From positions 124,001 through 188,000 of the IMG/VR virus record IMGVR_UViG_3300046810_000338: a stretch of 64,000 bases of DNA, one strand, 5' to 3'. How positions within the stretch are numbered: position 1 is the stretch's first letter; each line of letters begins with the position of its first letter. Both the position numbers and the translations under genes were made by a program. Positions 9,571-50,934 of this stretch are shown piece after piece. The notes under the pieces were generated by a model. That model was not told where the DNA came from and searched no databases. It worked only from the letters and a program-made list of their open reading frames with translations.

Positions 9571-9617
9571 CATATGGCCACTGCCATTCCCTGTGAGGGG
9601 AATGGCAGTGGCTTATG
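9571..9617. terminator. Bidirectional hairpin between convergent genes, flanked by CATA/TATG
   Basis: 15-bp perfect stem GCCACTGCCATTCCC(9577-9591)/GGGAATGGCAGTGGC(9598-9612). Confidence 0.75.
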
Positions 9618-9620
9618 CTG

Positions 9621-10889
9621 TTAGATGAACAGGTCTCGCTTGATATCCAAGATGGCCCCACGGCCAGGCTGTAGGCGGTGCAAGTTGGTACGCACTGAGT
9701 CTACGGCTGGAGCGTTATGCCATTGGATAGAATGCATGCGCAGCCGGTCGTGAATGCCATCTGGCACAATGACCACCCATTTGTCCCCTTCGTCTTCCAA
9801 CACGTAACTCATCAATCGCCCATCGTGGTGAACGGCTGGAGAGGTTACGGTTTCGTGGTGCAGGAACACACAAGGATGCTGTGTGGTTTCCAAAGGGATC
9901 TTGTCGCAATAGACGTCCGGCGACTGGACGGCAATGACAAACGATTGACTGGTGGTCAACAGTTCCAGCAGGAAGTTACGACCCTTGGACTCTGGTACAG
10001 AGATCATGGTGGGGGCCAGTGGGTTGGTGGAGATAGCCGCTCGGATACGCTGCAAGTCCAGATACTTCTCAGCCTTGAGGAAGTTCTCCAAGTACGGGTA
10101 GCGCAACAGGTTCAGTTCAAAACCTGAGTTACCGATCGAGCGGAACGTGCTGCCCAGTGGAATCAGGTAACCACACAGAGAGAGCATGGCCGTGCAGTTA
10201 TCCCAATCCACATCCTGTACGTTGAGATACAGCGGGGTGTCCAACGTGGCACCGTCTTCGGGCAGCCCTGTGATCATGCTTTCCACGATCGGATAGATCT
10301 TGCACCCCCCAAGAGGAGCCAGACTCACAATGCCCACCGAGTTGATCTTGGCTACCTGAGCAGACCGACCACCTTGCTTAACGTAGAGCCCACGTTCAGA
10401 GGAGTAGGTGCGATGCAGAAAGCCGTTGACTTCCACCAGTACGTTTGCCTCAACCAGTCCAGGGGAAAGCGTTGGGTGAGTCAGCAGTAGGTCTGTACGC
10501 TCAGAGAACGGCACTGTTGGATTAGGTCCAGCACCTGGGATAACTTCCTCTACTGAAAAGTTTGCTTCCAATGCGTTGGCGTACTTGGCTTTCACCGTCT
10601 TGGTTGCGGTGAACTCGACAGTAGGCAGTGCTTTGTTAGCCAGTGCAATGAACCAATTGGCAACGGTGATTGCCGAGAAGAAGGGTTGAACGAATGTCGC
10701 CCCATCCTGAGTGAAGTCGAAAAGGTATTGCACGTTGGGACTGGCATCGTGAGTCAAGATCATGCGGCTTTGACCATAAGTTGCAGTCAGTGTCCGAACG
10801 TCCGCTGCGAGGACTTCGGCCAGGTCAACTTCTAACCAGCGCATTCCATTGGCATTCACTTTGTGATAGAACTTTCTTAGCGTGTACAT
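9621..10889 (-). CDS. Virion structural protein (conserved in phiKZ-like phages)
   Basis: 422-aa ORF. Motifs NVLVEVNGFLHRT and LSLCGYL, and a position divergent from the tail-fibre genes, are recalled from relatives. Confidence 0.55.
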   Translation of the reverse strand: MYTLRKFYHKVNANGMRWLEVDLAEVLAADVRTLTATYGQSRMILTHDASPNVQYLFDFTQDGATFVQPFFSAITVANWFIALANKALPTVEFTATKTVKAKYANALEANFSVEEVIPGAGPNPTVPFSERTDLLLTHPTLSPGLVEANVLVEVNGFLHRTYSSERGLYVKQGGRSAQVAKINSVGIVSLAPLGGCKIYPIVESMITGLPEDGATLDTPLYLNVQDVDWDNCTAMLSLCGYLIPLGSTFRSIGNSGFELNLLRYPYLENFLKAEKYLDLQRIRAAISTNPLAPTMISVPESKGRNFLLELLTTSQSFVIAVQSPDVYCDKIPLETTQHPCVFLHHETVTSPAVHHDGRLMSYVLEDEGDKWVVIVPDGIHDRLRMHSIQWHNAPAVDSVRTNLHRLQPGRGAILDIKRDLFI

Positions 10890-10992
10890 AGTTCCGGTCC
10901 CTATATAGAGAGAAGTATGTTATGGACGATAGATGGCTATAGAATAGCCGCCCTACAAACACCCTAGAGACGGCTTTCGGAGTGCACGAGAC

Positions 10993-18053: not shown

Positions 18054-18677
18054 ATGTCTGTTGCACTGTCTGATTTCAACAAGAAGTTCATCATCACTCG
18101 CTACACCGGCATCGAAGCCGGTTACGTGAATGATCCATCCGATCTGGGTGGTGAGACCAACCACGGTATCACCAAAGGTTTGGCGACTCAGTACGCCGCT
18201 GACCTGAAAGCCAAGTTCGGTTGGGACGGCACCATGCGTAACCTGTCCACTGACGCAGCGTTCTATCTGTACGACGTTGAGTTCTGGGGCAAGATGCAGT
18301 TGGACAACGTCTTCAGTCTGCATCCTCTGATTGCCGACAAGATGTTCGACATCGGTATAAACGCTGGCAAGACGCGTTCGGTGACTTTCCTGCAAGAGTT
18401 CCTGAACGTCAACAACAACGGTCAGAAGCTGTACGCTGACCTCGTGGTAGACGGTGGGATCGGTACCAAGACCTTCAGTGCCCTGCAAGGCTTTGTTACT
18501 GCTCGTGGCAAGGATGGCCTAAAAACCCTCCTGCACTGCCTGATCGCTCGTCAGACCAGCTACTACACCGACATCTCGATGGCGCGTGAGGCTAATGAGC
18601 GCTTTACCTGGGGATGGTTCGGCAGAGCTTACAACTCAGCTGCCGATTACCAGGCACTCGGTTACCTGTACCACTAA
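18054..18677 (+). CDS. Endolysin, glycoside hydrolase family 108 with C-terminal peptidoglycan-binding domain
   Basis: EAGYVNDPSDLGGETNHGIT (GH108 EGGY..D..D.GG.T..GIT), KMFDIGINAG, LVVDGGIGTKT and NERFTWGWF. Confidence 0.9.
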   Translation: MSVALSDFNKKFIITRYTGIEAGYVNDPSDLGGETNHGITKGLATQYAADLKAKFGWDGTMRNLSTDAAFYLYDVEFWGKMQLDNVFSLHPLIADKMFDIGINAGKTRSVTFLQEFLNVNNNGQKLYADLVVDGGIGTKTFSALQGFVTARGKDGLKTLLHCLIARQTSYYTDISMAREANERFTWGWFGRAYNSAADYQALGYLYH

Positions 18678-18684
18678 GCTGCAC

Positions 18685-18715
18685 CATAGAGCCGGGGCAA
18701 TGCCCCGGCCTTATG
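18685..18715 (+). terminator. Hairpin with CATA/TATG flanks
   Basis: GCCGGGGCA(18691-18699)/TGCCCCGGC(18701-18709), TATG at 18712-18715. Confidence 0.65.
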
Positions 18716-18774
18716 CCCCTAGTTTATGACGCTACGTGATAGGGTCTTTATCCACCGTCTAAAGGAGACGCAAG

Positions 18775-19242: not shown

Positions 19243-19330
19243 ACCGCGATGGCCCTCTCCCATTCTGTGCGAGTGGGAGAGGGCTTGTCGATGCCTCTTA
19301 GCTGCGCCTAACTAAGTGGAGAATGCTACA

Positions 19331-20173
19331 ATGTCTAATTTGCATGCAAACTTGTTGCCGGGCACCAAAGTCATTCACGTTCACCCCGTTGCAAAGTTGC
19401 CGGTGATCCATAGCCGGTACCTGCAAAAGATCACTGCCAATGCCCGCCGTGAAATGAACCTGGTTGGTGCGCGATTCGATGATCAAATTATCTGGCGGTA
19501 TTTCCCAGAAGAGGTTGTTGACGACTTCTTGGTTCGCCAAGGTCAGCAGCCCATGATCGCCCCGTTGATCTTTGCCTACATTTCCGAATGGGCTACTGCT
19601 GAGATTGCAAAGCACGATCGAGTACATGACGGTGGGGCCATGCTGATTGACTCAGACAGCATGTCCATGGCGGCCATCGTTGTTCCTCGACTCAGCGCTT
19701 TCCCAAGCATCCATAGCTTTGCCTTTGTGGAAGTGAAAGGCATCTTGCGTTATCTGGACGCTGGCAGGGACTTCAAGGCAAACATTGGTCAAGTGGCGGT
19801 CGTTGCTGATCCAGACATTGACGTTAACTGCTGGATGTACGCTACGGTACCCTTACGACCACTGAAGTATCTGTGGGAGCTAGAGTGCAAGAATTTCAAT
19901 GAAAGCTCCGGCGAATCATTCTGCACCGCTGCATGGGAAAGAATGAGTTATGATAAACGGCTGGAGTTTGCCAAGAGTGTTATAGGGCAAATGGTTCCGC
20001 CTACCGTTCAAGAACTCTACGACAGACTGGCGGTTAAGAAGGAACTGTTTTGGCACCACCTTTCTTACGAAGAGCAGGTTAGCGCCTCCCAGTGCTTGAG
20101 ACGTCATGGGTTTACTTTCATGAAAGTTCAGCCAGTTGTCTTCCGAACCGATGCATCGGGTCACGGAGAGTAA
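19331..20173 (+). CDS. Hypothetical protein
   Basis: About 280 aa. GGAG RBS upstream of ATG 19331. No recognised motif. Confidence 0.6.
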   Translation: MSNLHANLLPGTKVIHVHPVAKLPVIHSRYLQKITANARREMNLVGARFDDQIIWRYFPEEVVDDFLVRQGQQPMIAPLIFAYISEWATAEIAKHDRVHDGGAMLIDSDSMSMAAIVVPRLSAFPSIHSFAFVEVKGILRYLDAGRDFKANIGQVAVVADPDIDVNCWMYATVPLRPLKYLWELECKNFNESSGESFCTAAWERMSYDKRLEFAKSVIGQMVPPTVQELYDRLAVKKELFWHHLSYEEQVSASQCLRRHGFTFMKVQPVVFRTDASGHGE

Positions 20174-20217
20174 GTTGTGTGGCTAGGGCTAACTGCCCTA
20201 GCCATTATGCCGCTACT

Positions 20218-20305: not shown

Positions 20306-21112
20306 ATGAAAGCAATCGTCCGTGTAAGTCCATACACCACTGTACCTACCATCCCGGTCAGTGCACTGCATACATTGAAACAGGGAATGAACACTGTTTT
20401 TAATATCAACGAAGAATACCTAGAACGCCACCTGGTCTGGGAATACGTCGCCACTCGCGAAGAAGGTAGCAGTGGCCGCATCATGGTCACGCCGCTGGTC
20501 CATGTCTTCCTGAGCGTCGAGCTGTCGAAGGTGCTGGCCGAGCGCATGCGTTATCCGTTCATGCCACCCGTGATTAGTCTGCCAAGTGGTCCTCGTTCCA
20601 TGGACTGGCAGATCGTTCTTTACACAGACGCTTTTGTGTCCGTGAAAGAACTTCTCTTTATCGAGAAGAACGGTCTGTTGCAAACCTTCGGCCGCACCGA
20701 TCGGTTCCAGAAATGGATTGACAACTATATCGACCTGGGGGAAGACGACTCTTTCGATGTAGGTCAATACTCTGCCGAATGGGCAGCGCCACTGCCTGCG
20801 CCGTTGAGTGCTAACCTGCCAGAAGTTGCGGCGCACGAGGTCAACCGTCAAGGTATGACTCTGCGCGAACTCACGGTCAACCGACTGCATCAGTACACCG
20901 AGCTTGGCAAGCCGGTTGGTCAGGCTAAGAACATCCCCGACGTTTTGGTTGGCCGGCTGTCTCCAAGTCTGACCAAGCAAATTATTGATGAGGGCCTGAT
21001 TCTCAAGGTTGACGACGATGGTTGCCTCACTGCTGTAACTGACAGCAACGGTACCTACCTCGACGGAATGACCGGTCTACCGGCAATCATCTCTGCTGTG
21101 CTGAGTCGCTAA
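20306..21112 (+). CDS. Hypothetical protein
   Basis: 268-aa ORF between two intergenic hairpins. Confidence 0.6.
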   Translation: MKAIVRVSPYTTVPTIPVSALHTLKQGMNTVFNINEEYLERHLVWEYVATREEGSSGRIMVTPLVHVFLSVELSKVLAERMRYPFMPPVISLPSGPRSMDWQIVLYTDAFVSVKELLFIEKNGLLQTFGRTDRFQKWIDNYIDLGEDDSFDVGQYSAEWAAPLPAPLSANLPEVAAHEVNRQGMTLRELTVNRLHQYTELGKPVGQAKNIPDVLVGRLSPSLTKQIIDEGLILKVDDDGCLTAVTDSNGTYLDGMTGLPAIISAVLSR

Positions 21113-21165
21113 GCAGCCTCTGCTCCTCCCGGCGTAGGTCGGGAGGAGCAGTATGCCGTAACTTT

Positions 21166-21193
21166 TTTTAAGACCTAGATTATCTAAGTGAAT
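21166..21193 (+). promoter_or_regulatory. Putative early promoter (phiKZ-type TTTAA-N4-TATATTAC architecture)
   Basis: TTTAA-GACC-TAGATTAT-CTAAGTGAAT. Confidence 0.6.
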
Positions 21194-21420
21194 GCCTTAG
21201 GATCATTCGACGGCATAGATGCCCTCGCCCAGGTCTTACCCTGAGCGAAGGACTTATTCCTGAAGAGAGATAACATGACGAAAGACTGAAATAAAGGAGC
21301 CCGCTATACGGACGACTGTCCCGACAGATAACCTGAGGCGTTACCTTGACCAACCGGAGATAGCTGTAGTGCCATGCATTCCCTCATGACACCCTCACCT
21401 TATCTAGCTCATTACTATAT
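21190..21420 (+). ncRNA. Candidate structured non-coding RNA / long leader
   Basis: ORF-free region after a promoter motif. Helices: ATGCC/GGCAT (21192-21216), TCGC.CAGG/CCTG.GCGA (21225-21248), CTGTC/GACAG (21316-21327). Confidence 0.35.
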
Positions 21421-21463
21421 TGCTTTGTTTGTTAAGGATAATGGAATGCCCTAAATAAAGAAA

Positions 21464-21490
21464 TTTCAAACCTATATTCTTGTTGTGAAA
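21464..21490 (+). promoter_or_regulatory. Putative early promoter
   Basis: TTTCA-AACC-TATATTCT-TGTTGTGAAA, about 45 nt upstream of ATG 21535. Confidence 0.6.
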
Positions 21491-21534
21491 TAAGGAAACT
21501 TAACTTTCCCTTATACCAACATTGGAGAAGTAAC

Positions 21535-23583: not shown

Positions 23584-23997
23584 ATGCAAGATACGTTTAA
23601 TTACGTGCTGTTGATTCTAGGTGCTATCGCTATCCTCGCAGGATCGGTGACTAGCAGTCCTACGTTGCTTGTAGGGGGAATTGTTGGTGTGGTGCTGACC
23701 TATCTACTCTTGCGCAGCTCGCGCATCGTAGAAGAGCTTCAGGCAGCTCTGGTGGAATCCACTCGCAAGGCAACTGCCGCTGAAACCAGCGCACGGATGT
23801 CTCGTCGTAGTGAGCAATCGATTGCAACCGAACTGCAAATGGTTCGTCGCTCGGTTGCAGAATGGCAAGGCCGGTATCACAAGTTGCTGATGGATTCGTC
23901 GCATGAACAGATCAAAGAGCATGGGCATCTGCCATTGCCACCCAAACCTGTTCTGATACGGATGCACTCGGTAACCGATATCCAGTCTCGAATGTAA
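23584..23997 (+). CDS. Two-TM membrane protein with coiled coil
   Basis: AGGAGA RBS before ATG 23584; helices VLLILGAIAILAG and LLVGGIVGVVLTYLLL. Confidence 0.6.
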   Translation: MQDTFNYVLLILGAIAILAGSVTSSPTLLVGGIVGVVLTYLLLRSSRIVEELQAALVESTRKATAAETSARMSRRSEQSIATELQMVRRSVAEWQGRYHKLLMDSSHEQIKEHGHLPLPPKPVLIRMHSVTDIQSRM

Positions 23998-24074
23998 ATG
24001 TGTTGATTCAGATCCACCCATCGGCGGGCCCCTAGAGGGGCCTGCCATTATGCCGCTGAAGCAAGGAGCTTATC

Positions 24075-25074: not shown

Positions 25075-25140
25075 AGCCCATAATGCCCACTCCTCCTAGC
25101 TCTAACTAGGAGGAGTGGGACTTCTACTACAGGAGGAGCT

Positions 25141-25565: not shown

Positions 25566-25623
25566 GGCATAAAGCCAGGCTCCCTACAGGGGAAGCCTGG
25601 CGACTTATGACACAGAGGATTGC

Positions 25624-33583: not shown

Positions 33584-33629
33584 CATAATTCCCTCCTTCC
33601 CCTAATGAGGAAGGAGGGAATGGCCTATG
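33584..33629. terminator. Bidirectional hairpin with CATA/TATG flanks
   Basis: ATTCCCTCCTTCC(33588-33600)/GGAAGGAGGGAAT(33609-33621) between convergent genes. Confidence 0.7.
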
Positions 33630-34491
33630 CCGTGTACACGTATTCAGCTGGGGCTGGAGCATCTTCGCCAGCGACATGCCAGTTACGACCTTCGGCCAAC
33701 ACACCGTCGGTTTTGATCAGGCACTCGTTGAAACCATTGTTTGGCGTCATGGTAATAATGCTGCGGCGGCCAGTGTGTTTGTCGAAGTCGATTTCGCCGA
33801 TCCATTTGCCTTGGGCGTTGAAGTACGGAATCAGAGCTTCCAGCAGAATCTTCGACCAGTTCTCGAAGCCTGCACCGGTTTCCAGGTCGTCCAACAGATC
33901 ACGCAACGAAAACATGCCACGAATGATCTGATTAGGCTCTTTACTTTCGATGACGCTACCGGCCGGCAGAGTAGCAACCGACAACGCAGCGAAGTGGATT
34001 TGACCGATGGCGTTGGAGTTGTCGTTGATCCAGCCGAAATGAGAGTAGACTGTGGGGTGCATGCCCGACCCACGAGGCTTGATGATCTCGATCTCTTCTG
34101 CACCCACTTCACGCTCACGGCTGGCTTCCAGGGAAGCGAAGAAGTCGGTGTTACCTTCCCCGTCGCTACGCCGGTCGGTGGCAAAGTCAACGTGACCACT
34201 GTAGCCGAGGGAGTACAGGCCCATCAGTTTTTCTTCGCCAACAGTTTTGGCCCGTTGATAGACAGAGAGCAGATCAGGCTTGTTCTGGTCATCATTGAGG
34301 ATGATGAAGAAGGTGTAGTCGATGGGTTGTTTCTCTGTGGCCCGAGCCTTGAGCACGGCCCGGTCTTCCCAGACAGCATCACCGGATACAGCACAACCGA
34401 AACCTTCGCGGGTCTGCGTGCTGTCCAGAAACAGTTGGTCCAGCAGATCGTCTACGGCTTCGCGTGGATAAGCCAATACTACTTCACCCAT
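33625..34491 (-). CDS. NUDIX-fold hydrolase (COG4112-like)
   Basis: KQPIDY, VYQRAKTVGEEKLMGLYSLGYSGHVD, REVGAEE and GWINDNSNAIGQIHF match the recalled pattern KQ.IPY / Y.R....GE.RL.G..SIG.GGHI / RE..EE / G.INDD...VG.VH. AAGGAG RBS before ATG 34491. Confidence 0.65.
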   Translation of the reverse strand: MGEVVLAYPREAVDDLLDQLFLDSTQTREGFGCAVSGDAVWEDRAVLKARATEKQPIDYTFFIILNDDQNKPDLLSVYQRAKTVGEEKLMGLYSLGYSGHVDFATDRRSDGEGNTDFFASLEASREREVGAEEIEIIKPRGSGMHPTVYSHFGWINDNSNAIGQIHFAALSVATLPAGSVIESKEPNQIIRGMFSLRDLLDDLETGAGFENWSKILLEALIPYFNAQGKWIGEIDFDKHTGRRSIITMTPNNGFNECLIKTDGVLAEGRNWHVAGEDAPAPAEYVYTA

Positions 34492-34558: not shown

Positions 34559-34592
34559 CATAACTCTCCCCCACTCGGGGGAGAGCCTTATG
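34559..34592. terminator. Hairpin with CATA/TATG flanks
   Basis: CTCTCCCCC(34564-34572)/GGGGGAGAG(34577-34585). Confidence 0.65.
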
Positions 34593-35211
34593 TCGTGGCT
34601 GGTTTAACAATGCCCGATTGAAGAATGATCTGCTCGTAGCGTGCAGCCAAAGCAGTAGCCTTGTTCAATTGGTCTTGCAGGGTTTGGTTCTGAGCGTAGT
34701 GAGTAGTGCGACCACGGATGGCTGCAATACGGTTCTGCTCAAAGCTCTCTGCCTGCTCAGGAGTCAGCAGCCCGGTGATAGGTGCTGTGAACTGCTGTAC
34801 ATCGCTTTGCAGCCCGGTCAAGTCACTGACCAGTGCTACGATCTCGGCGGTCACGTAGGTAAGGTCCAGGCCGTCTGGCAGAATACCAATGTCCACTCCA
34901 ATCACCATCCGACTGAAACCTTCCCCAACCGTGGTTGGGGCAGACAGGATGTAGGTGGTTGGAATGATAACCGTCGGATGCTCGTCTGCCTGCAATGTAA
35001 CCAGGCTGGTAGCATTTACCCGATCAGAGTCATAGGTCGCCTGGTCCAGACCCATGGGCGCATAGTAGTTGGCAAAGATATCAATGCCCGCTGCCTGCAC
35101 CTCACGGAAACTACGAATGGCGGTGGCCGTGTAACTAACATCTGCCACCAACGCAAACGGAGCTTGGACCTCGAACTTACCCCGTGCATAGATAAGAACT
35201 GAAGTTGCCAT
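34588..35211 (-). CDS. Virion structural protein (conserved in phiKZ-like phages)
   Basis: AAGGAG RBS. GKFEVQAPF, IRSFREV and VTLQ...HPTVIIPTTYILSAP are recalled as family motifs. Confidence 0.6.
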   Translation of the reverse strand: MATSVLIYARGKFEVQAPFALVADVSYTATAIRSFREVQAAGIDIFANYYAPMGLDQATYDSDRVNATSLVTLQADEHPTVIIPTTYILSAPTTVGEGFSRMVIGVDIGILPDGLDLTYVTAEIVALVSDLTGLQSDVQQFTAPITGLLTPEQAESFEQNRIAAIRGRTTHYAQNQTLQDQLNKATALAARYEQIILQSGIVKPATT

Positions 35212-39355: not shown

Positions 39356-39721
39356 ATGGCTACTGAGACCCTATGGACTAAATTATTGCGACTGATCGTC
39401 CCTAAAGGCGTGAAACGTACTCTGGTTCTTATTACGGTGTTCTGTGAGCTGGAAAAGGTACGCGGCAAGGAATCGCCCAGGCTCACTAGTCTGAATGCGC
39501 AAATGCATTTGTTTGACGACGACATGATCCTTGAGCGGATGGCTGATCTCTCCAGTGTGATATTCCAGTCAGCGCCGGCCTGCCCAATTAGCCCTAACGC
39601 TTCTGTTATGGACAATTGTGCCGAGCTGCTCTGCTGGTTGCCGAATTGGTTGGCCTATGGCGATCGGGATGTCATGGTTCACGATCTGGCAGAAGTGACT
39701 GTTTCAAATTTTGACAGTTGA
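39356..39721 (+). CDS. Hypothetical protein (conserved jumbo-phage neighbourhood)
   Basis: 121 aa following the RNase H-like gene. Confidence 0.6.
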   Translation: MATETLWTKLLRLIVPKGVKRTLVLITVFCELEKVRGKESPRLTSLNAQMHLFDDDMILERMADLSSVIFQSAPACPISPNASVMDNCAELLCWLPNWLAYGDRDVMVHDLAEVTVSNFDS

Positions 39722-39724: not shown

Positions 39725-39770
39725 CATAACCCCTCCCTCCGACCGTCAGGCTGGAGGGAGGGAAGTTATG
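39725..39770. terminator. Bidirectional hairpin with CATAAC/GTTATG flanks
   Basis: CCCTCCCTCC(39731-39740)/GGAGGGAGGG(39753-39762). Confidence 0.7.
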
Positions 39771-41027
39771 TCATTGCCAGTTATAGATCTTGCTGTCGTC
39801 GTCTTGAGTGAACGCCAGCACCAGTGCCTCAACCGTCAGGATACTGCATGCGATGGTATCGCTGTCGGAGCCCTGAGCCGCTGCCAATAGGTTAAGGTTG
39901 GTGATCGGATACAGATGCTCGCCGATGCGTACCGCACCTACAGCGTCCTTGGAGTAGCTGTATTCATCGGTGTCATCGGTACCTACCAACGGGTCACGCT
40001 GAAGGTGCTCGAACACCCAATCCAGATCGGACAGGGGAACCACCTCGTGGTCAGGCCAGTTCAGTTTGTCTTTGACGAAACTGTACGGGATCTTGACGCC
40101 GCCGAACGTGAAGTGTTGTTCGCTCGTCTGCACGAAAGACTCGGTGGCCATCTTGCGACTTTCAGCCAACGGCTTCTTGAGTTCGCCGACTTGATGATCA
40201 CATGCAACCACCAGCTCACGAATCAGGATACCCATTTGACCATACAGGTCAACTGCCTGACTCATGTTCAGGCAGATGCCTGACAGAATAGTAGCAGTCT
40301 GCGCCGAGAGCTTGGGCGTACTCTCATCAGTGCCCTTCTCGATGATGTCGATCACACGACCCACCTTCTCGGAGATCTCACGCACCTGTTTTACAATCTT
40401 GCTAGGATTGGTTTCCAGGTAACGAGTGGCCAACGAGTTAGCGTTGTCCCAAGTAGGCTTGATGGCCGACAGGTTAGGGTACACCGCTTGCAGGGGCAGA
40501 GAATCCACACGCCCGGTTGGATCAACGAACTTGCTCAGTGCGGCACGAGTGCCTTCGATGTCCTGTTCCTTGAAGTGCTTGAGATCGGTTACGCCAGCAG
40601 CCGAGGCCAGGGTGTCAGGACTGGCGATGCGCAGGCTCAACCAGATGCTGAAAGGCTTGAGCACTTCGTTCTCAATGTTCTCAACCTTGAGCAAGGCGTC
40701 GAACAGAGACTCGCTGTAATCGGCCAGGCCGCCCTTGAGACCACGAGGGGTGGTGATCTTGACCTGAGAGATGTCGCTGAAGCGGGCACCGGCCAGATCT
40801 TTGATAACGCTGTTGTAGGCAACCAGAGGAATCTTGGCATCGGGACGGATGCGGTTGTTGGACCAGTCGCCAATGATGTTGGCCACACCACGCAGTTTGG
40901 CATGCACAGAGGACACAACGTCGCCCACCATGCCGATCCCCAACGCGTCGGTGATGATCATCTGGTGTTTAAGTTCAAGATCGCGCATTTCAAGTACCGT
41001 CCACAATGTCGGATTAATAGGTTCCAC
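39771..41027 (-). CDS. Virion (head) protein (phiKZ gp153-like) with C-terminal extension
   Basis: 418 aa, divergent from uvsX. Helical core followed by MATE|S and an extra ~120-aa domain. Confidence 0.5.
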   Translation of the reverse strand: MEPINPTLWTVLEMRDLELKHQMIITDALGIGMVGDVVSSVHAKLRGVANIIGDWSNNRIRPDAKIPLVAYNSVIKDLAGARFSDISQVKITTPRGLKGGLADYSESLFDALLKVENIENEVLKPFSIWLSLRIASPDTLASAAGVTDLKHFKEQDIEGTRAALSKFVDPTGRVDSLPLQAVYPNLSAIKPTWDNANSLATRYLETNPSKIVKQVREISEKVGRVIDIIEKGTDESTPKLSAQTATILSGICLNMSQAVDLYGQMGILIRELVVACDHQVGELKKPLAESRKMATESFVQTSEQHFTFGGVKIPYSFVKDKLNWPDHEVVPLSDLDWVFEHLQRDPLVGTDDTDEYSYSKDAVGAVRIGEHLYPITNLNLLAAAQGSDSDTIACSILTVEALVLAFTQDDDSKIYNWQ

Positions 41028-43727: not shown

Positions 43728-44333
43728 ATGGAATTGGATCGCGCTCAGGCAGCTGCGCATTACGTGGGTCAGGCACAAGAGGCTTTGGCTATTGTTCTGG
43801 CTCGCTGCGAATGGACCTATGGTCAAGACGCCGCCAAGAAAGCTGCACTGATGTTCACGCAGTTGTTCTTCGGTCACAACCTGCCGCTCTACTGCGAACC
43901 CAATGAAGTGCTGACCTTGTTTAACACGATCAGTACCACCGCCATTTCCCCAAAGGTTTGGGGTGGTGAATTCATTATGGGCCTGAGTCAGCAGTTCAAC
44001 ATGTTTGTTGAACCTGCCGTGCAGTACCCACACGTCAAGTCGCCCGCTGACCAGCAACCAAAACTGACAGAGTTGGGCTGGCACCTGGTTGCAGCCATGA
44101 CAGGCATGCATGGCGATACGCCTAAGGACGTTGATCAAGACCTGGTACACCCTTACGGTCACTACATGCTCGACGTGCCCAAGGCGTACCAGGTGACAAC
44201 GATCCTGTTCAACTTCCCTTGGATGACACCGCTCTATCTGTTGTCTCTGGCAGACCCTGCGCACATCTCGGTCATCGTCGGCCCGTATGGCTCACGAGAC
44301 ATCCCTGCCGGTTCCGAGCAAGACGGTGCGTGA
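43728..44333 (+). CDS. Hypothetical protein
   Basis: AGGAG RBS; 201 aa. Confidence 0.6.
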   Translation: MELDRAQAAAHYVGQAQEALAIVLARCEWTYGQDAAKKAALMFTQLFFGHNLPLYCEPNEVLTLFNTISTTAISPKVWGGEFIMGLSQQFNMFVEPAVQYPHVKSPADQQPKLTELGWHLVAAMTGMHGDTPKDVDQDLVHPYGHYMLDVPKAYQVTTILFNFPWMTPLYLLSLADPAHISVIVGPYGSRDIPAGSEQDGA

Positions 44334-45076
44334 ACCGTCGTAAGTTCTGCGTGTTCCTAGACGCTATTCTGGATACGCGTCTGGGAGCCATGAACACCTT
44401 CAGTCCGGATATCTCTGGTAAGCTGGTAGAGACGCCCGACTACTTCAACCGTATCGATGACAACTATGATCGGTTTGGTCCAGGCGTGACCATGATGTGG
44501 CGCAACATCTACGCAGGTCGTAATGTTGAGGTCTTGAAAAGCAGTTTCCCAACCATGATCCCTGCACTGGTAGGTTTGGAAGTTCGCTCGATCTACGCCA
44601 AAGCCATTGACCACCCAGTGCACAAAGGGGTGGACGTTGACATCAACATCTGGCCTTACAAGCTGGATGATATCGAGCAGGATGAAATCTGTCTGGCGTT
44701 GCAGTCTATGATCATTCCCGTCGACGAGTACGACGAGTATGCATTTGACACCCGGTTCAGAACGATCAGTGTTGCTCCCAAGGATTTTACCCTGGAACTG
44801 ATTCGTGAGAACTACGCCATGGTGATCATGTACGACTTTCAGGAGTGGTACGACATCCAGGCAGCGGAGATCATCAAAGGCGAGTCTACTGCGCGTCTGA
44901 CTACGATGTGTGTGCCGATGTTGTTCAAGCACACGCCCAAACGTAAGGATTTGATTGCGCAGGATGGGCAGATACAAAACCCATTCGACGATACCAAACG
45001 AATCCTCTCCCTGTACATCCAATTGGATTTCTGGGATGCACGGGTGTTTTCTCTACCGAGCCCATTCGAAGCATAA
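44330..45076 (+). CDS. Conserved jumbo-phage protein (HAD-like N-terminal motif)
   Basis: GTGA overlap start at 44330. VFLDAILDTRLG, INIWPYKL and MIMYDFQEW are recalled family motifs. Confidence 0.55.
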   Translation: MNRRKFCVFLDAILDTRLGAMNTFSPDISGKLVETPDYFNRIDDNYDRFGPGVTMMWRNIYAGRNVEVLKSSFPTMIPALVGLEVRSIYAKAIDHPVHKGVDVDINIWPYKLDDIEQDEICLALQSMIIPVDEYDEYAFDTRFRTISVAPKDFTLELIRENYAMVIMYDFQEWYDIQAAEIIKGESTARLTTMCVPMLFKHTPKRKDLIAQDGQIQNPFDDTKRILSLYIQLDFWDARVFSLPSPFEA

Positions 45077-45115
45077 GCCCTCTCCCTCTTCCCGCAAAGG
45101 AAGAGGGAGAGTATG
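45072..45115. terminator. Bidirectional hairpin with CATA/TATG flanks
   Basis: CTCTCCCTCTTCC(45080-45092)/GGAAGAGGGAGAG(45099-45111). Confidence 0.7.
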
Positions 45116-45117
45116 CC

Positions 45118-45648
45118 CTAGCTTGGATCATGTTCAAGCAGGTTGTTATTGACCCGTGCGTGCTTCTGAGCCAGGTCTTTGTAGGTTATCGTTTGAACAC
45201 CCACATCCATCTCACCAGGCACCGTTGATATCTCAGGCAGACTGGAGTCGTCGATGTGCGGCAACTCGCGTATCCCCGTACGAGCAGTAGGGTCACGCAA
45301 CAGGGGCTTGTTACCTTGCCGCCGGCTGAGTTCAACCAAAGCCTGTGCCACCAACTGTTCGCGCGCAGCAGCAGTGTTGTCGGTCTTCTGTTTCATCAGA
45401 CCAAATGAAACTTGGTCCATGTTGGACAACGTGACCAACAGCAGCTTGGCATCATCCAGATCTTTAGGGACCTTGGTGCCGTCATTGGTTAGGTTGTTGA
45501 CTATCTTGAGCCTGACCGACTGTGTAAGGGCCAAAACCCCTTCAGGTGTATCAGGCAACTTATCTGGATTCTCGTACGCCGGGATCTTGCTAGGCACGTA
45601 GGTATCCAGTTCTTCTTCTCCCATCAATTCTGTCATGATATTCTCCAC
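45118..45648 (-). CDS. Conserved hypothetical protein (phiKZ gp171-like)
   Basis: LALTQSVRLKIV, LLVTLSNMD and C-terminal VPGEMDVG are recalled family motifs. Confidence 0.5.
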   Translation of the reverse strand: MENIMTELMGEEELDTYVPSKIPAYENPDKLPDTPEGVLALTQSVRLKIVNNLTNDGTKVPKDLDDAKLLLVTLSNMDQVSFGLMKQKTDNTAAAREQLVAQALVELSRRQGNKPLLRDPTARTGIRELPHIDDSSLPEISTVPGEMDVGVQTITYKDLAQKHARVNNNLLEHDPS

Positions 45649-45660: not shown

Positions 45661-45688
45661 ATCTCAGACCTAAATTATCTACGTGAGA
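45661..45688 (+). promoter_or_regulatory. Putative early promoter
   Basis: TCTCA-GACC-TAAATTAT-CTACGTGAGA; differs at only 4 of 23 positions from the 21171 motif. Confidence 0.6.
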
Positions 45689-46295: not shown

Positions 46296-46988
46296 ATGAG
46301 TACACAAAGAGGGAGTGACATCTCAATTTTGTTGGCCTCTCACGACAAACGTATCCGAGAAGCGTCTGGCTTATTGAGCAGGCTGTATCGGTTAACCTTG
46401 CTTGAGCTGTCGATAACCCCGTATAAGTGGAACCTGTTGCTGACCAACTACTTGGACAATCTGGCTCACACCCAGAGTCTGTCTCAGGACAAGATTACGA
46501 ACGAGCGCAACAACCTGCGTAAGGGACTGTCTGAGCCTGACATGACATTCGAGATGTTGGCCCGAGGATTAAAGGTCCTCAATCCAAAGGAGATTCATTT
46601 TGACGTGGAGTTAATGTTCCCCCAGAACGTGACACTCACAACGACGATCAACATGATCTCCCCACAGAACGGCGAACAGGGAAAGCTGACTGAGATGTAT
46701 AGCAACATCCTTGCCATGCTTGGCAAGGACGTGAACAACCTGGAACCGGAGATAGATGCCTACCTCTCCAATCCGTTGATTCGCGAAGATATAAAAGGAC
46801 GCAAGAAAGGAAACGACAAGGGCAACCTACGTCGTGAACTACCAGGCATGGCCATGACTTTTGACGTGTTCAAGAAAGGACTACGGATTCTTGCACCCGA
46901 TGAAGTAACCATGACCATCCGACTGCGGTGGAATCGCAGTCGTGTCACCAAACACAAGCTTATCATTGTTACCCCCAAGCAAGCATAA
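46296..46988 (+). CDS. Conserved protein with an internal tandem domain duplication
   Basis: Two similar halves: NERNNLRKGLSEPDMTFEMLARGLKVLNPKEIHFDVEL and NDKGNLRRELPGMAMTFDVFKKGLRILAPDEVTMTIRL. Confidence 0.65.
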   Translation: MSTQRGSDISILLASHDKRIREASGLLSRLYRLTLLELSITPYKWNLLLTNYLDNLAHTQSLSQDKITNERNNLRKGLSEPDMTFEMLARGLKVLNPKEIHFDVELMFPQNVTLTTTINMISPQNGEQGKLTEMYSNILAMLGKDVNNLEPEIDAYLSNPLIREDIKGRKKGNDKGNLRRELPGMAMTFDVFKKGLRILAPDEVTMTIRLRWNRSRVTKHKLIIVTPKQA

Positions 46989-47088
46989 GTCAGCCCTCTC
47001 TCCAGCCTTCGGGTTGGAGAGAGGGTCTGTTGCCCTCGGTTTATTTTTTGGCCAATCCTATAGTCCTTTTATCAGTGGAATCCTAATC

Positions 47089-48099: not shown

Positions 48100-48113
48100 C
48101 AAAGGCAAAAGTC

Positions 48114-48692
48114 ATGGCTGACAAAGTGCTGATCGTCCCCATACGGCAGTTTAACTTGTATAGCGTTGCATACAACAAGGAGTTCACAGAAGCACTCGGT
48201 AAACCCTACTGGCTGACCAATGAAAACTACGTTTATTACTTGGGCGATAAGTTCAGTAATGAATGGGTGCTGGTACCCCGTGGGTTTGGTACGGATGGCG
48301 CAACTGTCCCTCCAGCCTTTCAGGGCATTCTACCGGTGTTTGGTAAACATGGAGCAGCCGTTATCTTGCATGACTGGTTGTGTGAGAACGGCTATGTGTG
48401 GCACATGGACAAGGCAACTGGGATTGTCCATAAACGGGTGCTGACCCGTAAGGAAATCGATTCTGTTTTCATCGAAGCCCTGACCGTGGTTGAAATGCCA
48501 GCCGATACTATCAAGCTGGTTAACTTGGGCTTTATCGCCTATCGCAGTTGGGCTAACCCATCTGTCCCTAACCCCAACATTGAAAAGAACAAATTGGAAA
48601 TGAACTGGGCTGCCAACAATGGGGTAGTCCCCTTTTCTGGTGAGCAGCTGTACGACGTTGTAGGTCACCCGCCTGCTTGGGTATTCGTGTAA
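48114..48692 (+). CDS. DUF1353-family protein
   Basis: VLVPRGFGTDGATVP...GAAVILHDWLC...TRKEIDSVFIEAL. Confidence 0.8.
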   Translation: MADKVLIVPIRQFNLYSVAYNKEFTEALGKPYWLTNENYVYYLGDKFSNEWVLVPRGFGTDGATVPPAFQGILPVFGKHGAAVILHDWLCENGYVWHMDKATGIVHKRVLTRKEIDSVFIEALTVVEMPADTIKLVNLGFIAYRSWANPSVPNPNIEKNKLEMNWAANNGVVPFSGEQLYDVVGHPPAWVFV

Positions 48693-48696
48693 GCGA

Positions 48697-48735
48697 CATA
48701 GCCTCCTGCTCCTGTGAGGGAGCAGGAGGCGTATG
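48697..48735. terminator. Bidirectional hairpin with CATA/TATG flanks
   Basis: GCCTCCTGCTCC(48701-48712)/GGAGCAGGAGGC(48719-48730). Confidence 0.75.
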
Positions 48736-48738
48736 CTG

Positions 48739-50865
48739 TTAGTTGTTGGCCACGGTACCACGACCAAAGATGGAGAGAATCCGACCAGGCAAACTCCCTG
48801 CTACGTTGTTGATAAAACTGGATTGACTGGACCAGGTGTCGAATGAGGTCATCATTCTGGTTTGAGCCAATCGAATCTTCTGCGTGGTGTAGATTTGTTC
48901 TTGCAGTGACAAGCCGCCCAGCACAGCCATCATCTCACTGAACTTGCTGGAGTCGTCATAGGTTGCCGGGTCGAGCAGAGTGGCTTTGGCTTGGGATGAG
49001 TTAGTAGCCTCACCTGTCACCAGGCCGCGCAAGCCATCGTCAATCTTGCCCACAGTTTGCGTCAGGCCGGACCAGAAACTAGCTTCTGTGCTGATTGGCA
49101 TGTGCACGATGCTGGACAGGTCAACGATTTCAAAGTTCAGCGTGACGCCCAGCGCTTCACCTTCAGAGTTACGGCCCAGGTTACCAACACCTACTGCGAT
49201 AGACAAGTTACGTACCATGCCCAGCTTGATGGTGCAGCGCCCACGAGAGTACGCTTCCAGAATGAAAGGCGAGGTGTAGGACATCTTACCGGTCGATTGA
49301 GGCATGACTGTAGCTAGTGCCATGGACACTGGAACCCAAATGTCCTTGAACCGACTGATAGGATCGCCCGACCAACCCCGCAGTTCGATCGTGTAGTTGG
49401 TAGCCGGCATGCTAGCAGCCGAACTCTGCCACACTTGCGGAATGTCAACAAAGGCGTTACCCATCAGCGCTGTCAGGTTAGACACACCGATGAAGTCCAG
49501 ACCGCCTGAGATGACGTTCTTGATCGAACCCACTACTGTGTCAACCAGCCCAATACCGGTTTGGAACTCAGCCGCATTGAAGCGGATAGAGCGTGCGTTG
49601 GATACAGTGCCGTTGAAACCAGAAGCAATCGAAGACTCGCCTACGGTGTTGTCAAACGAGAAGGTACTAGGACCGCTGTTATCCACACGGAAGGTTACCC
49701 ACTCGGCACCCTCGTTCATGCCCGCCTTTTGGTGTTCAACCATGGCGTCCAACATGCTCCATTTGGCCAAGGTACTGGCGTCGGCCGTCTTCTTGCCTGA
49801 GGAGTCAGTGCCACCTGTTTCGTTGTCCGCCTTAAACGACAGCACCGCCCGTTCAAGCTTATCACTGTCCAGGTTCTCAAACTGGTTACCCGTAGCGTTC
49901 AGATAACGACGGGTGTAGGTCATGACGTCACCGATCTTAGTATCGGTTAGCGCGCCAAACGCCGCGTTGTTTGCCCATTGCCTGAAGGAGTCAATGAACC
50001 CGCCCTTAGACGTGGCCTGAATGGCCAGGTCGTTAACCGCTTCCTGGAACTTGAGCGATAGTCGGTTATAGCGGTTGGCCACACCAAACAGATCGATGCC
50101 ACCGTCCTTACGGAAGATGTCTGGCAACATTGCGTTGTACTGCTTGATCTCGTCTGCACGAGCAGCAATCTCTTCCTTGGAATCATCGCGGCCACCCACA
50201 CGAGGAATAATCCCCATGTTGGTAGCCAAGGAGTTGGCAATGTTGTTCGCCGCCATCCAGTAGTTGTGCATCGTTGGTTCCAAGTAGTAATACCTGGAAA
50301 TACTTTTGCCCAACAGAAAAGCAACGGCCTTGCCGACAAACATAATAGGCGCAATGGTTGCCCCCACCACCGCCGTCAGCATCCGCCCCGCCTCATAGAA
50401 GACGCTAGGGCCCGCACCTGTACGAGCCACCACCGAAGCAGTAGGATCATAGAAGCTGAAGAAGAACGACAACAGCCCGTTCATCTTAGGCACACCCAGA
50501 CGCATGGTGATGTATTCACCTGTGTCGTCGTACATCGCCGAATAAGCGCGACCAAGGCCACGAGACGCTGCCACGCTGTTACGCACGTCTGTCTTGCGGT
50601 CTTCTTCACTGATCAACAACTGGTACACCGGGTTGTCAATCGAATAGCTCAGCGCAGTGTTGAGCCCAGGTACCGTCATATCGGCATACTGGGTAAACTG
50701 TGGAAACGGGTTGATGCAGCGAGCGCCACCCAATGTGGTGTCGCTGAATTTTACGCGTGCACCCGAATCCAATCGATTCTGTCGGTCTTGAATGGTACGG
50801 CCTGCCTTTGTAATCAAAAAGCTGGACCGTACCCAACTGTCGTTCCGTACCTGGGTGGTCGCCAT
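48739..50865 (-). CDS. Tail/baseplate hub-associated virion protein (phiKZ gp182-like)
   Basis: DTTLGG..CINPFPQFTQYAD, YYYLEPTMHNYW, FVDIPQVWQSS and PFILEAYSRGR; directly downstream of the tape-measure gene. Confidence 0.7.
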   Translation of the reverse strand: MATTQVRNDSWVRSSFLITKAGRTIQDRQNRLDSGARVKFSDTTLGGARCINPFPQFTQYADMTVPGLNTALSYSIDNPVYQLLISEEDRKTDVRNSVAASRGLGRAYSAMYDDTGEYITMRLGVPKMNGLLSFFFSFYDPTASVVARTGAGPSVFYEAGRMLTAVVGATIAPIMFVGKAVAFLLGKSISRYYYLEPTMHNYWMAANNIANSLATNMGIIPRVGGRDDSKEEIAARADEIKQYNAMLPDIFRKDGGIDLFGVANRYNRLSLKFQEAVNDLAIQATSKGGFIDSFRQWANNAAFGALTDTKIGDVMTYTRRYLNATGNQFENLDSDKLERAVLSFKADNETGGTDSSGKKTADASTLAKWSMLDAMVEHQKAGMNEGAEWVTFRVDNSGPSTFSFDNTVGESSIASGFNGTVSNARSIRFNAAEFQTGIGLVDTVVGSIKNVISGGLDFIGVSNLTALMGNAFVDIPQVWQSSAASMPATNYTIELRGWSGDPISRFKDIWVPVSMALATVMPQSTGKMSYTSPFILEAYSRGRCTIKLGMVRNLSIAVGVGNLGRNSEGEALGVTLNFEIVDLSSIVHMPISTEASFWSGLTQTVGKIDDGLRGLVTGEATNSSQAKATLLDPATYDDSSKFSEMMAVLGGLSLQEQIYTTQKIRLAQTRMMTSFDTWSSQSSFINNVAGSLPGRILSIFGRGTVANN

Positions 50866-50891
50866 GTAAATTCTCCAGAAAGAGGATTGAT

Positions 50892-50934
50892 CATAAAGTA
50901 AGCCCTGACTCCCACAGGTAGGGGAGTCAGGGCT
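50892..50934 (-). terminator. Hairpin followed by TTTATG on the minus strand
   Basis: AGCCCTGACTCCC(50901-50913)/GGGAGTCAGGGCT(50922-50934). Confidence 0.65.

What the first reader, a model, noticed from the sequence alone, without database searches (positions are those of the whole stretch)
9571..50934. Window-wide family of hairpins followed by a conserved TATG-Y-Y-G motif instead of a U-tract
At least 11 GC-rich intergenic hairpins are followed, usually within 0-5 nt and in the direction of transcription, by TATG (9571, 18685, 20180, 21120, 24023, 25568, 33584, 34559, 39725, 45072, 48697). Between convergent genes the mirror CATA flanks the other side. The following bases are strongly conserved: TATGCCG (20206, 21152, 24049, 33626, 34559 minus), TATGTCG (34589, 48697 minus) and TATGCTG (9614, 48732, 33584 minus, 39725 minus). 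Poly-U is mostly absent. TATG is the reported TSS motif of phiKZ late promoters, and TATGCTGTT resembles the sequence-specific T7 class II terminator (ATCTGTT). Inference: this is a dedicated sequence-specific terminator, processing site or terminator-promoter switch for the phage-encoded multisubunit RNAPs.
Basis: partly seen in the sequence, partly recalled or inferred. Interest (0 to 1): 0.72.

Follow-up and report, generated by a model that had tools for sequence, protein, structure and literature searches.

The report
PhiKZ-type hairpin-TTATG transcription terminators
The GC-rich hairpins followed by TTATG-Y-Y-G are real and far beyond chance, but they are this uncultured jumbo phage's copies of a terminator motif already mapped by RNA 3'-end sequencing in phages phiKZ and 201phi2-1, so the finding is sound but not new.

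Summary
Every listed site is there. Across the 228-kb genome, 65 of 767 TATG (8.5%) have a stem of 9 or more pairs ending within 8 nt upstream, against about 0.6% for most control 4-mers. The tail consensus is tTATG-C-Y-g-T, and T-tracts are absent.

The elements sit 2-10 nt after stop codons. They occupy 19 of 24 convergent, 24 of 88 co-directional and 1 of 24 divergent intergenic regions. That is a terminator distribution, not a promoter one. At convergent genes the flanks are palindromic (GGCATAA-hairpin-TTATGCC).

The architecture matches the published phiKZ terminator motif (stem-loop + YTTATKYYGT, 61 terminators) and 201phi2-1 motif A. Published phiKZ 3' ends fall mostly at TATGYY|, 7-8 nt after the stem. 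No mapped phiKZ start site coincides with a terminator TATG. 201phi2-1 terminators of this kind also stopped host RNA polymerase.

The "terminator" reading is therefore supported. "Dedicated to phage RNAP", "terminator-promoter switch" and "T7 class II-like" are not.

Added here:
- The TTATGYYG tail is shared with Erwinia, Ralstonia and Xanthomonas relatives.
- Seoulvirus, a Vibrio phage and Elvirus use TTATTT instead.
- TTAT is the family-wide core.

Verdict: a new member of a known kind, of modest interest.

The parts
9571..9620 (.). Bidirectional terminator between convergent genes 9153-9569(+) and 9621-10889(-): CATA-tGGCCACTGCCATTCCC-loop-GGGAATGGCAGTGGCt-TATGCTG
   Evidence: (-36.9 kcal/mol, z -7.7)
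18685..18718 (+). Terminator after gene 18054-18677(+): CATAGA-GCCGGGGC-aat-GCCCCGGC-CT-TATGCCC. The mirror CATA is present. A second TATG lies at 18725.
20180..20212 (+). Terminator after gene 19331-20173(+): hairpin + tTATGCCG, no upstream mirror
21120..21158 (+). Terminator after gene 20306-21112(+): hairpin + TATGCCG, followed by an early-promoter-like motif at 21171-21191
21210..21262 (.). Hairpin 21222-21251. The minus-strand tail is catcTATGCCG (CATA at 21214). The plus-strand tail is the variant ACTTATTCC.
24023..24055 (+). Terminator after gene 23584-23997(+): hairpin + atTATGCCG
25079..25119 (-). Minus-oriented terminator: hairpin 25086-25119 with tail catTATGGGC on the minus strand (CATA at 25079)
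25568..25612 (.). Hairpin flanked by CATAAA and gacTTATGACA, downstream of gene 25624-26058(-)
33584..33632 (.). Bidirectional terminator between 32660-33580(+) and 33625-34491(-): CATA-hairpin-ggccTATGCCG
34559..34595 (.). Terminator between co-directional minus genes: GGCATAA-CTCTCCCCC-loop-GGGGGAGAG-ccTTATGTCG. The minus-strand tail is TATGCCG.
39725..39773 (.). Bidirectional terminator between 39356-39721(+) and 39771-40988(-)
45072..45118 (.). Bidirectional terminator between 44330-45076(+) and 45118-45636(-)
46984..47035 (.). Hairpin 46994-47026 with upstream GCATAAG (minus-strand tail TTATGC) and a variant plus-strand tail TCTGTTGCC
48697..48738 (.). Bidirectional terminator between 48114-48692(+) and 48739-50865(-): CATA-hairpin-gTATGCTG
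50892..50934 (-). Terminator after the 2338-aa tail-fibre/lysozyme gene 50942-57958(-): hairpin 50901-50934 with minus-strand tail acttTATGATC

Best explanation
These are hairpin-dependent (intrinsic-type) transcription terminators of the phiKZ-type family, carried by a nucleus-forming, phiKZ-like jumbo phage assembled from a rhizosphere metagenome.

Proposed working. The nascent RNA folds into a 9-16-bp GC-rich stem with a pyrimidine-rich 5' arm, usually capped by a tetraloop. Where bacterial terminators have a U-tract, these have (U)UUAUG-Y-Y. By analogy with phiKZ, the transcript ends about 6-8 nt after the stem, at UAUGYY, with G as the next templated base.

Where genes converge, the tail is mirrored upstream (GGCATAA ... 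TTATGCC), so one palindrome terminates both directions and lengthens the stem.

Shown here: sequence architecture, placement, orientation and homology to mapped terminators.

Inferred: the UUAU stretch supplies the weak proximal RNA:DNA hybrid, and the Y(-1)/G(+1) step after a G-rich 3' arm supplies a pause. That step resembles the G-10/Y-1/G+1 elemental pause consensus, which I recall from prior knowledge and did not test.
For: Placement
- 49 elements start 2-33 nt (median 8) after a same-strand stop codon.
- The element is present in 19/24 convergent, 24/88 co-directional (25 nt or longer) and 1/24 divergent intergenic regions.
- In co-directional regions the forward TATG is present in 21 hairpins; only 4 have the reverse TATG alone.
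- Convergent region 113321-113449 (genome coordinates) holds two hairpins, each followed by TTATGCC in its own transcription direction.

Enrichment
- 8.5% of TATG against about 0.6% of most control 4-mers lie next to a strong stem.
- TATG is enriched 24-fold in flanks of strong hairpins.

Match to published data
- phiKZ motif BCCYCCCCHWWDGGGRRGGBYTTATKYYGT, 61 terminators, from ONT-cappable-seq 3' ends (PMC10914365).
- 201phi2-1 motif A (n=59), with A+B giving an elongated stem (PMC11512511).
- My own scan of 100 kb of phiKZ shows the same GCATAA-GCCCTCCC-loop-GGGAGGGC-aTTATGTCGT units.
- Published phiKZ TTS map at TATGYY| in 6 cases, TATGY| in 3, and TAT|G or T|ATG in 4. T070 and T071 lie on opposite strands of one convergent hairpin.
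- Eight 201phi2-1 terminators were functional in a host reporter trap, six of them as well as or better than lambda T0.

Pause geometry and phage identity
- Relative to the predicted end: G at -10 in 30/49, Y at -1 in 44/49, G at +1 in 24/49.
- The phage encodes homologues of chimallin, nvRNAP gp123 and gp68, and a vRNAP beta subunit.
Against: - No RNA data exist for this phage. No RNA run was listed, and the only holders are metagenome DNA runs. Termination here rests on homology and placement.
- ONT 3' ends in relatives cannot by themselves separate termination from 3' processing.
- The literal 30-nt phiKZ consensus finds no match within 3 mismatches in the window, because stems here are longer, 10-16 bp against 8.
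- The role assigned to the tail (weak hybrid plus pause) is inference only.
- 5 co-directional hairpins also carry the mirror flank and 4 carry only the reverse one. Termination of the annotated genes does not require that; it may reflect antisense termination or errors in my crude gene map.
Confidence: 0.85

Rival explanations
1. Dual terminator-promoter unit. The TATG after the hairpin is also a late-promoter start site for the non-virion RNAP (G = +1), so each element ends one transcript and starts the next.
For: - TATG with G = +1 is the necessary core of phiKZ late promoters and is bound by nvRNAP subunit gp123.
- This phage keeps most pocket residues of gp123.
- In 17 of 21 co-directional elements the terminator TATG is the only TATG between the hairpin and the next gene, 11-100 nt upstream of the start codon in most.
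- The extra determinants of late promoters are still unknown.
Against: - 35 of 66 intergenic flanks point into the 3' end of a converging gene, where a gene promoter makes no sense.
- The element is nearly absent from divergent regions, 1 of 24.
- In phiKZ no mapped TSS lies at a terminator TATG in 118-190 kb. Late TSS near terminators use a different TATG 10-42 nt downstream, as at P075 and P078.
- P119L has no upstream hairpin.
- Several elements here are followed by a distinct early-type promoter motif instead.
Confidence: 0.08
2. Promoter-mimic pause. The phage nvRNAP recognises the non-template TATG of the tail with the same beta-lobe pocket that reads the late promoter, and this sequence-specific pause replaces the U-tract.
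For: - The same 4-mer is used at promoters and terminators, and pocket residues are largely conserved here.
- G and YYG are conserved in phages from 37 to 59% GC.
- TATG is depleted inside genes in every clade that has TATG-type terminators.
Against: - The pocket is described as incomplete in the transcribing complex.
- 201phi2-1 terminators of this kind also work with host RNAP.
- Mapped 3' ends lie mostly 2 nt past the G, not in the promoter register.
- SPN3US shows equally strong TATG avoidance (0.58) but uses TTATTT tails, so the two signals can be uncoupled.
Confidence: 0.12
3. RNA processing or stability elements. The 3' ends arise by nuclease cleavage or trimming at a hairpin-plus-UAUG signal rather than by RNAP release.
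For: - ONT 3' ends cannot tell termination from processing.
- The phage encodes a ribonuclease-like protein at window 37561-39342.
- The conserved tail could be a nuclease recognition site.
Against: - 3' ends 7-8 nt after the stem are the canonical termination geometry.
- Cloned 201phi2-1 terminators reduce downstream reporter expression in uninfected host cells.
- Elements sit at nearly every convergent junction, where stopping RNAP matters.
Confidence: 0.05
4. DNA-level palindromes: cruciform or protein-binding sites, or mobile REP/MITE-like repeats, unrelated to transcription.
For: - There are perfect inverted repeats with conserved outer arms (GGCATAA/TTATGCC).
- Two loci share identical stems (CTCTCCCTCTTCC at genome 88892 and 169080).
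Against: - Orientation follows transcription in co-directional regions, where many elements have only the downstream tail.
- Stem length and sequence vary while pairing is kept, so arm spacing is not fixed.
- Elements sit 2-10 nt after stop codons.
- RNA 3' ends map there in relatives.
Confidence: 0.02

Closest known systems
Conserved phiKZ intrinsic-terminator motif (Putzeys et al. 2024, Microlife 5:uqae002; PMC10914365)
   Same: - GC-rich stem-loop with a pyrimidine-rich 5' arm and G-rich 3' arm, followed by YTTATKYYGT.
- Intergenic position after genes.
- Bidirectional use at convergent genes with mirrored GCATAA.
- Tetraloops are common.
   Different: - Stems here are 9-16 bp and variable, not the near-invariant 8-bp GCCCTCCC.
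- The tail prefers TATGCC(G) over phiKZ's TATGTYG.
- The genome is 52% GC against 37%.
- The literal 30-nt consensus does not match.
- There is no RNA evidence for this phage.
201phi2-1 terminator motifs A and A/B (Microb Biotechnol 2024;17:e70037; PMC11512511)
   Same: Motif A is reported to resemble the phiKZ motif. A+B gives an elongated stem, as the CATAA/TTATG extension does here. Terminators are functional in vivo.
   Different: I could not see the 201phi2-1 logos or tables, because no supplements are held. The equivalence of motif B with the upstream mirror is my inference.
Canonical bacterial intrinsic terminator (GC hairpin + 7-9-nt U-tract)
   Same: - The hairpin lies directly upstream of the release site.
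- 3' ends lie 7-8 nt after the stem in phiKZ.
- The first tail bases are U-rich (UUAU).
- An upstream complement gives bidirectionality, like A-tract/U-tract pairs.
   Different: - There is no U-tract: mean 3.3 T in 8, never 6 or more.
- Conserved A, G and YYG occupy the tail.
- The standard hairpin + T-tract scan is not enriched.
phiKZ late promoter (TATG, G = +1; Yakunina et al. 2015; PMC4666361; structure PMC12809450)
   Same: It shares the tetranucleotide TATG. This phage has homologues of the nvRNAP subunits that read it.
   Different: - Validated late promoters lack the hairpin.
- They are followed mostly by A, G or T rather than YYG.
- They map to other positions than the terminator TATG.
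- The elements here are enriched at convergent junctions, not divergent ones.
Hairpin-TTATTT(T) tails of other Chimalliviridae (SPN3US, Vibrio phiKT1019, Elvirus phiRU), surveyed here
   Same: A strong hairpin followed by TTAT. TTAT is enriched 5-25-fold after hairpins in all eight genomes examined.
   Different: After TTAT these lineages continue with T-rich sequence. TATG occurs in only 6-15% of flanks, against 60-71% in this phage, phiKZ, Ea35-70 and Xoo-sp14.
T7 class II (sequence-specific) terminator ATCTGTT
   Same: It is a hairpin-independent sequence signal. Four listed flanks here read TATGCTGT(T/C).
   Different: T7 RNAP is an unrelated single-subunit enzyme. The signal here always has a hairpin. 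CTGTT is not part of the consensus TATGCYGT.

Membership tests
phiKZ-type conserved terminator motif | GC-rich stem-loop with C/T-rich 5' arm and G/A-rich 3' arm | tested here: met
   The 5' arm is 72% pyrimidine. Stems are 9-16 bp and the loop is 4 nt in 29/49. Folds reach -21.6 to -36.9 kcal/mol.
phiKZ-type conserved terminator motif | Tail YTTATKYYGT directly after the stem | tested here: met
   The position matrix gives T-TATG-C-Y-G-T, with a spacer of 0-2 nt in 36/49. Top 6-mers after hairpins are TATGCC and TTATGC.
phiKZ-type conserved terminator motif | Literal match to the published 30-nt IUPAC consensus | tested here: not met
   0 matches within 3 mismatches in the window. The cause is longer, variable stems, not a different architecture.
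phiKZ-type conserved terminator motif | Lies downstream of genes and is bidirectional at convergent pairs | tested here: met
   The hairpin starts a median 8 nt after the stop codon. The element is in 19/24 convergent regions, and 13 of 22 convergent hairpins have both tails.
phiKZ-type conserved terminator motif | Transcript 3' ends map to the tail | not testable with these tools
   No RNA run was listed for this metagenome-derived phage. In phiKZ the ends map at TATGYY|.
phiKZ-type conserved terminator motif | Host genome is a phiKZ-like phage with its own multisubunit RNAPs | tested here: met
   vRNAP beta (PHROG 2986, E 1e-173), gp123 homologue (E 1e-56), gp68 homologue (E 1e-35) and chimallin homologue (E 3e-26).
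Canonical intrinsic terminator | U-tract (5 or more U in 8) after the hairpin | tested here: not met
   Mean 3.3 T in 8, and none of 36 window flanks has 6 or more. The consensus scan is not enriched.
phiKZ late promoter | TATG with transcription starting at G, placed upstream of a gene to be expressed | tested here: inconclusive
   TATG is present, but 35/66 flanks face a converging gene and only 1/24 divergent regions has the element. The TSS is not testable here. In phiKZ no TSS lies at a terminator TATG.
T7 class II terminator | Conserved ATCTGTT acting without a hairpin on T7-type RNAP | tested here: not met
   The consensus after TATG is CYGT, and a hairpin is always present. I looked for no T7-type single-subunit RNAP; the RNAP genes found are multisubunit-type.

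The most novel reading that the evidence does not exclude
The terminator tail is a promoter mimic. During elongation, the phage non-virion RNAP re-reads the non-template TATG with the same gp123 beta-lobe pocket that fixes the late-promoter start site. The resulting sequence-specific pause, together with the hairpin, replaces the U-tract.

Probability: 0.12. Interest if true: 0.7.

Novelty: new member of a known kind. Interest (0 to 1): 0.3.

Why it matters
For annotation, the result is practical. Standard terminator finders that look for a hairpin plus T-tract miss nearly all terminators of this phage. A hairpin + TTAT(G) rule finds about 48 and delimits its transcription units.

For biology, the motif is now seen in phages from 37 to 59% GC that share less than 40% identity in RNAP subunits. 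TTAT is the family-wide core and G-Y-Y-G is a clade-specific extension. This suggests selection by the phage transcription machinery rather than chance.

It also gives a clean comparative handle for asking how non-canonical multisubunit RNAPs terminate. The termination mechanism of phiKZ-type RNAPs has not been studied biochemically in the literature I could search. The kind of element itself, however, is already published.

Tried and rejected
- RNA evidence. No RNA run was listed, and only two metagenome DNA runs hold the sequence.
- Close relatives. No near relative is in the phage collection; megablast gave nothing and the best vRNAP-beta identity is 39%.
- Rfam. There are no matches in the window.
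- Literal phiKZ consensus. It gave 0 matches because stem lengths differ.
- TTATGYYG alone is only weakly enriched: 12 sites against 5.9 +/- 2.5. The signal lies in the hairpin association.
- Supplements. None are held for the two journal papers, so I used the bioRxiv supplement instead.
- Ceyssens et al. 2014 could not be read.
- TATG avoidance as proof of function. TATG and CATA are depleted to 0.62 and 0.51 against synonymous shuffles, but TATA is too at 0.50. Only the contrast with TATC (0.94-1.0) is informative.
- gp123 pocket comparison. It rests on alignments at 20-33% identity and a handful of related lineages. I treat the Y406 to F or H/W pattern as a hint only.
- Chance, a sigma-70 promoter role and a T7 class II relationship were considered and rejected.
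- My gene map comes from a crude home-made caller. A few 'reverse-only' elements may reflect missed small genes.

Full report
**What the window is.** The 64-kb window is bases 124001-188000 of a single 228,499-bp contig, 52% GC. IMG/VR and CheckV rate the contig a linear virus record, 82% complete. The DNA is held by a rhizosphere metagenome run.

The phage encodes these phiKZ hallmarks:
- a virion-RNAP beta subunit (PHROG 2986, E 1e-173);
- homologues of phiKZ nvRNAP gp123 (E 1e-56) and the sigma-like gp68 (E 1e-35);
- a homologue of the nuclear-shell protein gp54 (E 3e-26).

It is therefore a phiKZ-like, probably nucleus-forming jumbo phage. No close relative is in the phage collection; the best vRNAP-beta identity is 39%.

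Ten of the hairpins fold at -21.6 to -36.9 kcal/mol, with z from -3.0 to -7.8. I found further copies in the window. These are minus-oriented elements with hairpins at 21222-21251, 25086-25119 and 50901-50934, and a hairpin at 46994-47026 that has only the upstream mirror.

Genome-wide figures:
- 65 of 767 TATG (8.5%) have a stem of 9 or more pairs ending within 8 nt upstream. Most control 4-mers give 0.4-0.8%.
- TATG is the top 4-mer next to strong hairpins, in 50 of 84 flanks. That is 24-fold over background.
- Anchored on TATG, 49 sites give t-TATG-C-Y-g-T. The spacer is 0-2 nt in 36, the loop is a tetraloop in 29, and the 5' arm is 72% pyrimidine. The first 8 tail bases hold on average 3.3 T.
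- Classical hairpin + T-tract sites and sigma-70-like promoters are not enriched.

**Where the elements sit.** I used a self-trained ORF caller that gave 237 genes covering 89% of the genome. By that map, hairpins begin 2-33 nt (median 8) after a same-strand stop codon.

| Intergenic region type | Regions with the element |
|---|---|
| Convergent | 19 of 24 |
| Co-directional, 25 nt or longer | 24 of 88 |
| Divergent | 1 of 24 |

At convergent pairs, 13 of 22 hairpins carry the tail on both strands, forming the palindrome GGCATAA-hairpin-TTATGCC. In co-directional regions, 21 have the forward tail, 5 of those also have the mirror, and 4 have only the reverse tail. One convergent region (genome 113321-113449) has two hairpins, each followed by TTATGCC in its own direction of transcription.

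This is the distribution expected of a terminator. It is the opposite of what a promoter would show.

**It is a known motif.** Putzeys et al. 2024 mapped 133 phiKZ termination regions by ONT-cappable-seq. [quoted passage not shown]

The 201phi2-1 study found a strongly similar motif A (n=59). It also found that co-occurrence with a second motif elongates the stem. Eight such terminators were functional in uninfected Pseudomonas chlororaphis, six of them as well as or better than lambda T0.

My scan of 100 kb of phiKZ shows the same units, for example aacaGCATAA-GCCCTCCC-loop-GGGAGGGC-aTTATGTCGT. I placed the published TTS coordinates on the phiKZ sequence:
- The 3' end falls at TATGYY| in 6 cases.
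- It falls at TATGY| in 3 cases.
- It falls within TATG in 4 cases.
- That is 7-8 nt after the stem, with G as the next base.
- T070 and T071 lie on opposite strands of one convergent hairpin.

The literal 30-nt consensus does not hit the window, because stems here are longer. The architecture is the same.

**Promoter or terminator-promoter switch?** TATG with G = +1 is the necessary but insufficient core of phiKZ late promoters. It is read on the non-template strand by a pocket in gp123.

Three results argue against a dual role in phiKZ:
- The validated promoter P119L has no hairpin.
- None of about 30 mapped TSS between 118 and 190 kb coincides with a terminator TATG.
- Where a late TSS follows a terminator, it uses another TATG 10-42 nt downstream, as at P075 and P078.

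In this phage several terminators are followed by a different motif, ttttAGACCTAAATTATCTAAGTGA, which is early-promoter-like. A dual role cannot be excluded here, because 17 of 21 co-directional elements have no other TATG before the next gene. It has no positive support.

**How it probably works.** What is shown is a hairpin plus a conserved tail at the ends of genes, homologous to mapped terminators that also work with host RNAP. What follows is inferred.
- UUAU supplies the weak proximal hybrid.
- Release occurs at a Y(-1)/G(+1) step, with G at -10 from the G-rich 3' arm. The counts are G-10 in 30/49, Y-1 in 44/49 and G+1 in 24/49.
- This resembles the elemental pause consensus of multisubunit RNAPs, which I recall from prior knowledge and did not test.
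- The upstream mirror gives bidirectionality and a longer stem.

**Comparative extension, which is new here.** Tails after strong hairpins in whole genomes:

| Genome | Flanks with TATG | Typical tail |
|---|---|---|
| This phage | 60% | TATGCC(G) |
| phiKZ (100 kb) | 71% | TTATGC, TATGCT |
| Erwinia Ea35-70 | 67% | TATGCC(G) |
| Xanthomonas Xoo-sp14 | 64% | TATGCC(G) |
| Goslar | 22% | mixed |
| SPN3US | 6% | TTATTT |
| Vibrio phiKT1019 | 14% | TTATTT |
| Elvirus phiRU | 15% | TTATTT |

Ralstonia RP12 behaves like the first group in a 42-kb sample. TTAT is enriched after hairpins in all eight genomes. The distant Staphylococcus S6 and Bacillus PBS1 show no TATG tails in 41-kb samples.

TATG is depleted inside genes relative to synonymous-codon shuffles, while TATC is not:
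- This phage 0.58, phiKZ 0.85, Ea35-70 0.66, RP12 0.60, Xoo-sp14 0.40, Goslar 0.62 and SPN3US 0.58.
- There is no depletion in Elvirus, JM-2012, S6 or PBS1.

All TATG-tail lineages therefore avoid TATG. SPN3US avoids it too without using it in terminators, so the two signals can be uncoupled.

In the gp123 homologues the pocket residues F151, H331 and Q466 are invariant. In this phage S144, K158 and S334 are also kept, H185 becomes Y and Y406 becomes F. Position 406 is H or W in the TTATTT lineages. These are low-identity alignments of few, related lineages, so this is a hint only.

**Verdict.**
The elements are terminators with a conserved non-U tail. No evidence shows they are dedicated to the phage RNAPs, that they are promoter switches, or that they are T7-like.
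- The kind of element is already published for phiKZ and 201phi2-1.
- This is a new member in a divergent, uncultured phage. The modest added value is a family-wide picture and an untested promoter-mimic hypothesis.

Noticed in passing
window 21171-21191 and 45666-45686; 13 more copies elsewhere in the genome: A conserved motif tttt[c/a]AGACCTAAATTATCTAAGTGA has 15 copies within 5 mismatches. All are on the + strand and most lie 40-150 nt upstream of + genes. They often sit 15-20 nt after a hairpin-TTATG terminator. The motif resembles phiKZ early promoters (..AGATCTATATTAC..), so it is probably this phage's early (virion-RNAP) promoter.
   Followed up: partly
window 21113-21534: This 420-nt gap has no convincing ORF. 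The early-type promoter at 21171-21191 is followed by hairpin 21222-21251, which has the tail ACTTATTCC and upstream GGCATAGATG. This could give a small RNA of roughly 60-70 nt, like the short 5'UTR-derived RNAs reported for phiKZ. About 30 nt at 21455-21490 (gaaatttcaaacctatattcttgttgtgaa) recur near genome position 213,830.
   Followed up: partly
window 4719 and 25326; about 15 further sites on the + strand of the genome: Runs of the form TTA-T(6-10)-GT lie 10-25 nt after terminators or directly before ribosome-binding sites. The same TTATTTTTTTTGT follows hairpins in Salmonella phage SPN3US and Vibrio phage phiKT1019. It could be a second terminator class or part of a promoter upstream element.
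   Followed up: partly
whole genome, coding regions: TATG (sense) and CATA (antisense) are depleted to 0.62 and 0.51 of the synonymous-shuffle expectation (z -12 and -9), while TATC is 0.94. The same holds in phiKZ, Ea35-70, RP12, Xoo-sp14, Goslar and SPN3US, but not in Elvirus, JM-2012, S6 or PBS1. TATA is depleted too, so part of the effect is general TA avoidance.
   Followed up: partly
genome 119708-121267 (outside the window, locus L013): This is the homologue of nvRNAP subunit gp123. Of the residues that contact TATG in phiKZ, S144, F151, K158, K190, H331, S334 and Q466 are kept. H185 becomes Y, Y406 becomes F and Y399 becomes R. Position 406 is H or W in lineages whose terminator tails lack the G.
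   Followed up: partly
window 19247-19290 and 46994-47026: These strong hairpins lie after genes and lack TATG on the transcribed side. Their tails are CTTGTCGATGCC and TCTGTTGCC. The second has the upstream mirror GCATAAG. They are variant or decayed terminator tails.
   Followed up: no
genome 61502-63226 and 71481-72671 (outside the window): These are homologues of the phiKZ nuclear-shell protein gp54 (E 3e-26) and of the sigma-like nvRNAP subunit gp68 (E 1e-35). The phage is likely nucleus-forming. The contig is rated 82% complete and comes from a rhizosphere metagenome.
   Followed up: yes
genome 88892 and 169080 (window 45080): Two terminators at distant loci share an identical 13-bp stem, CTCTCCCTCTTCC/GGAAGAGGGAGAG, with different loops. 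Stems throughout are variations on a CTCCC-rich theme, as in phiKZ (GCCCTCCC). This suggests either a constraint on stem composition or spread by duplication.
   Followed up: no
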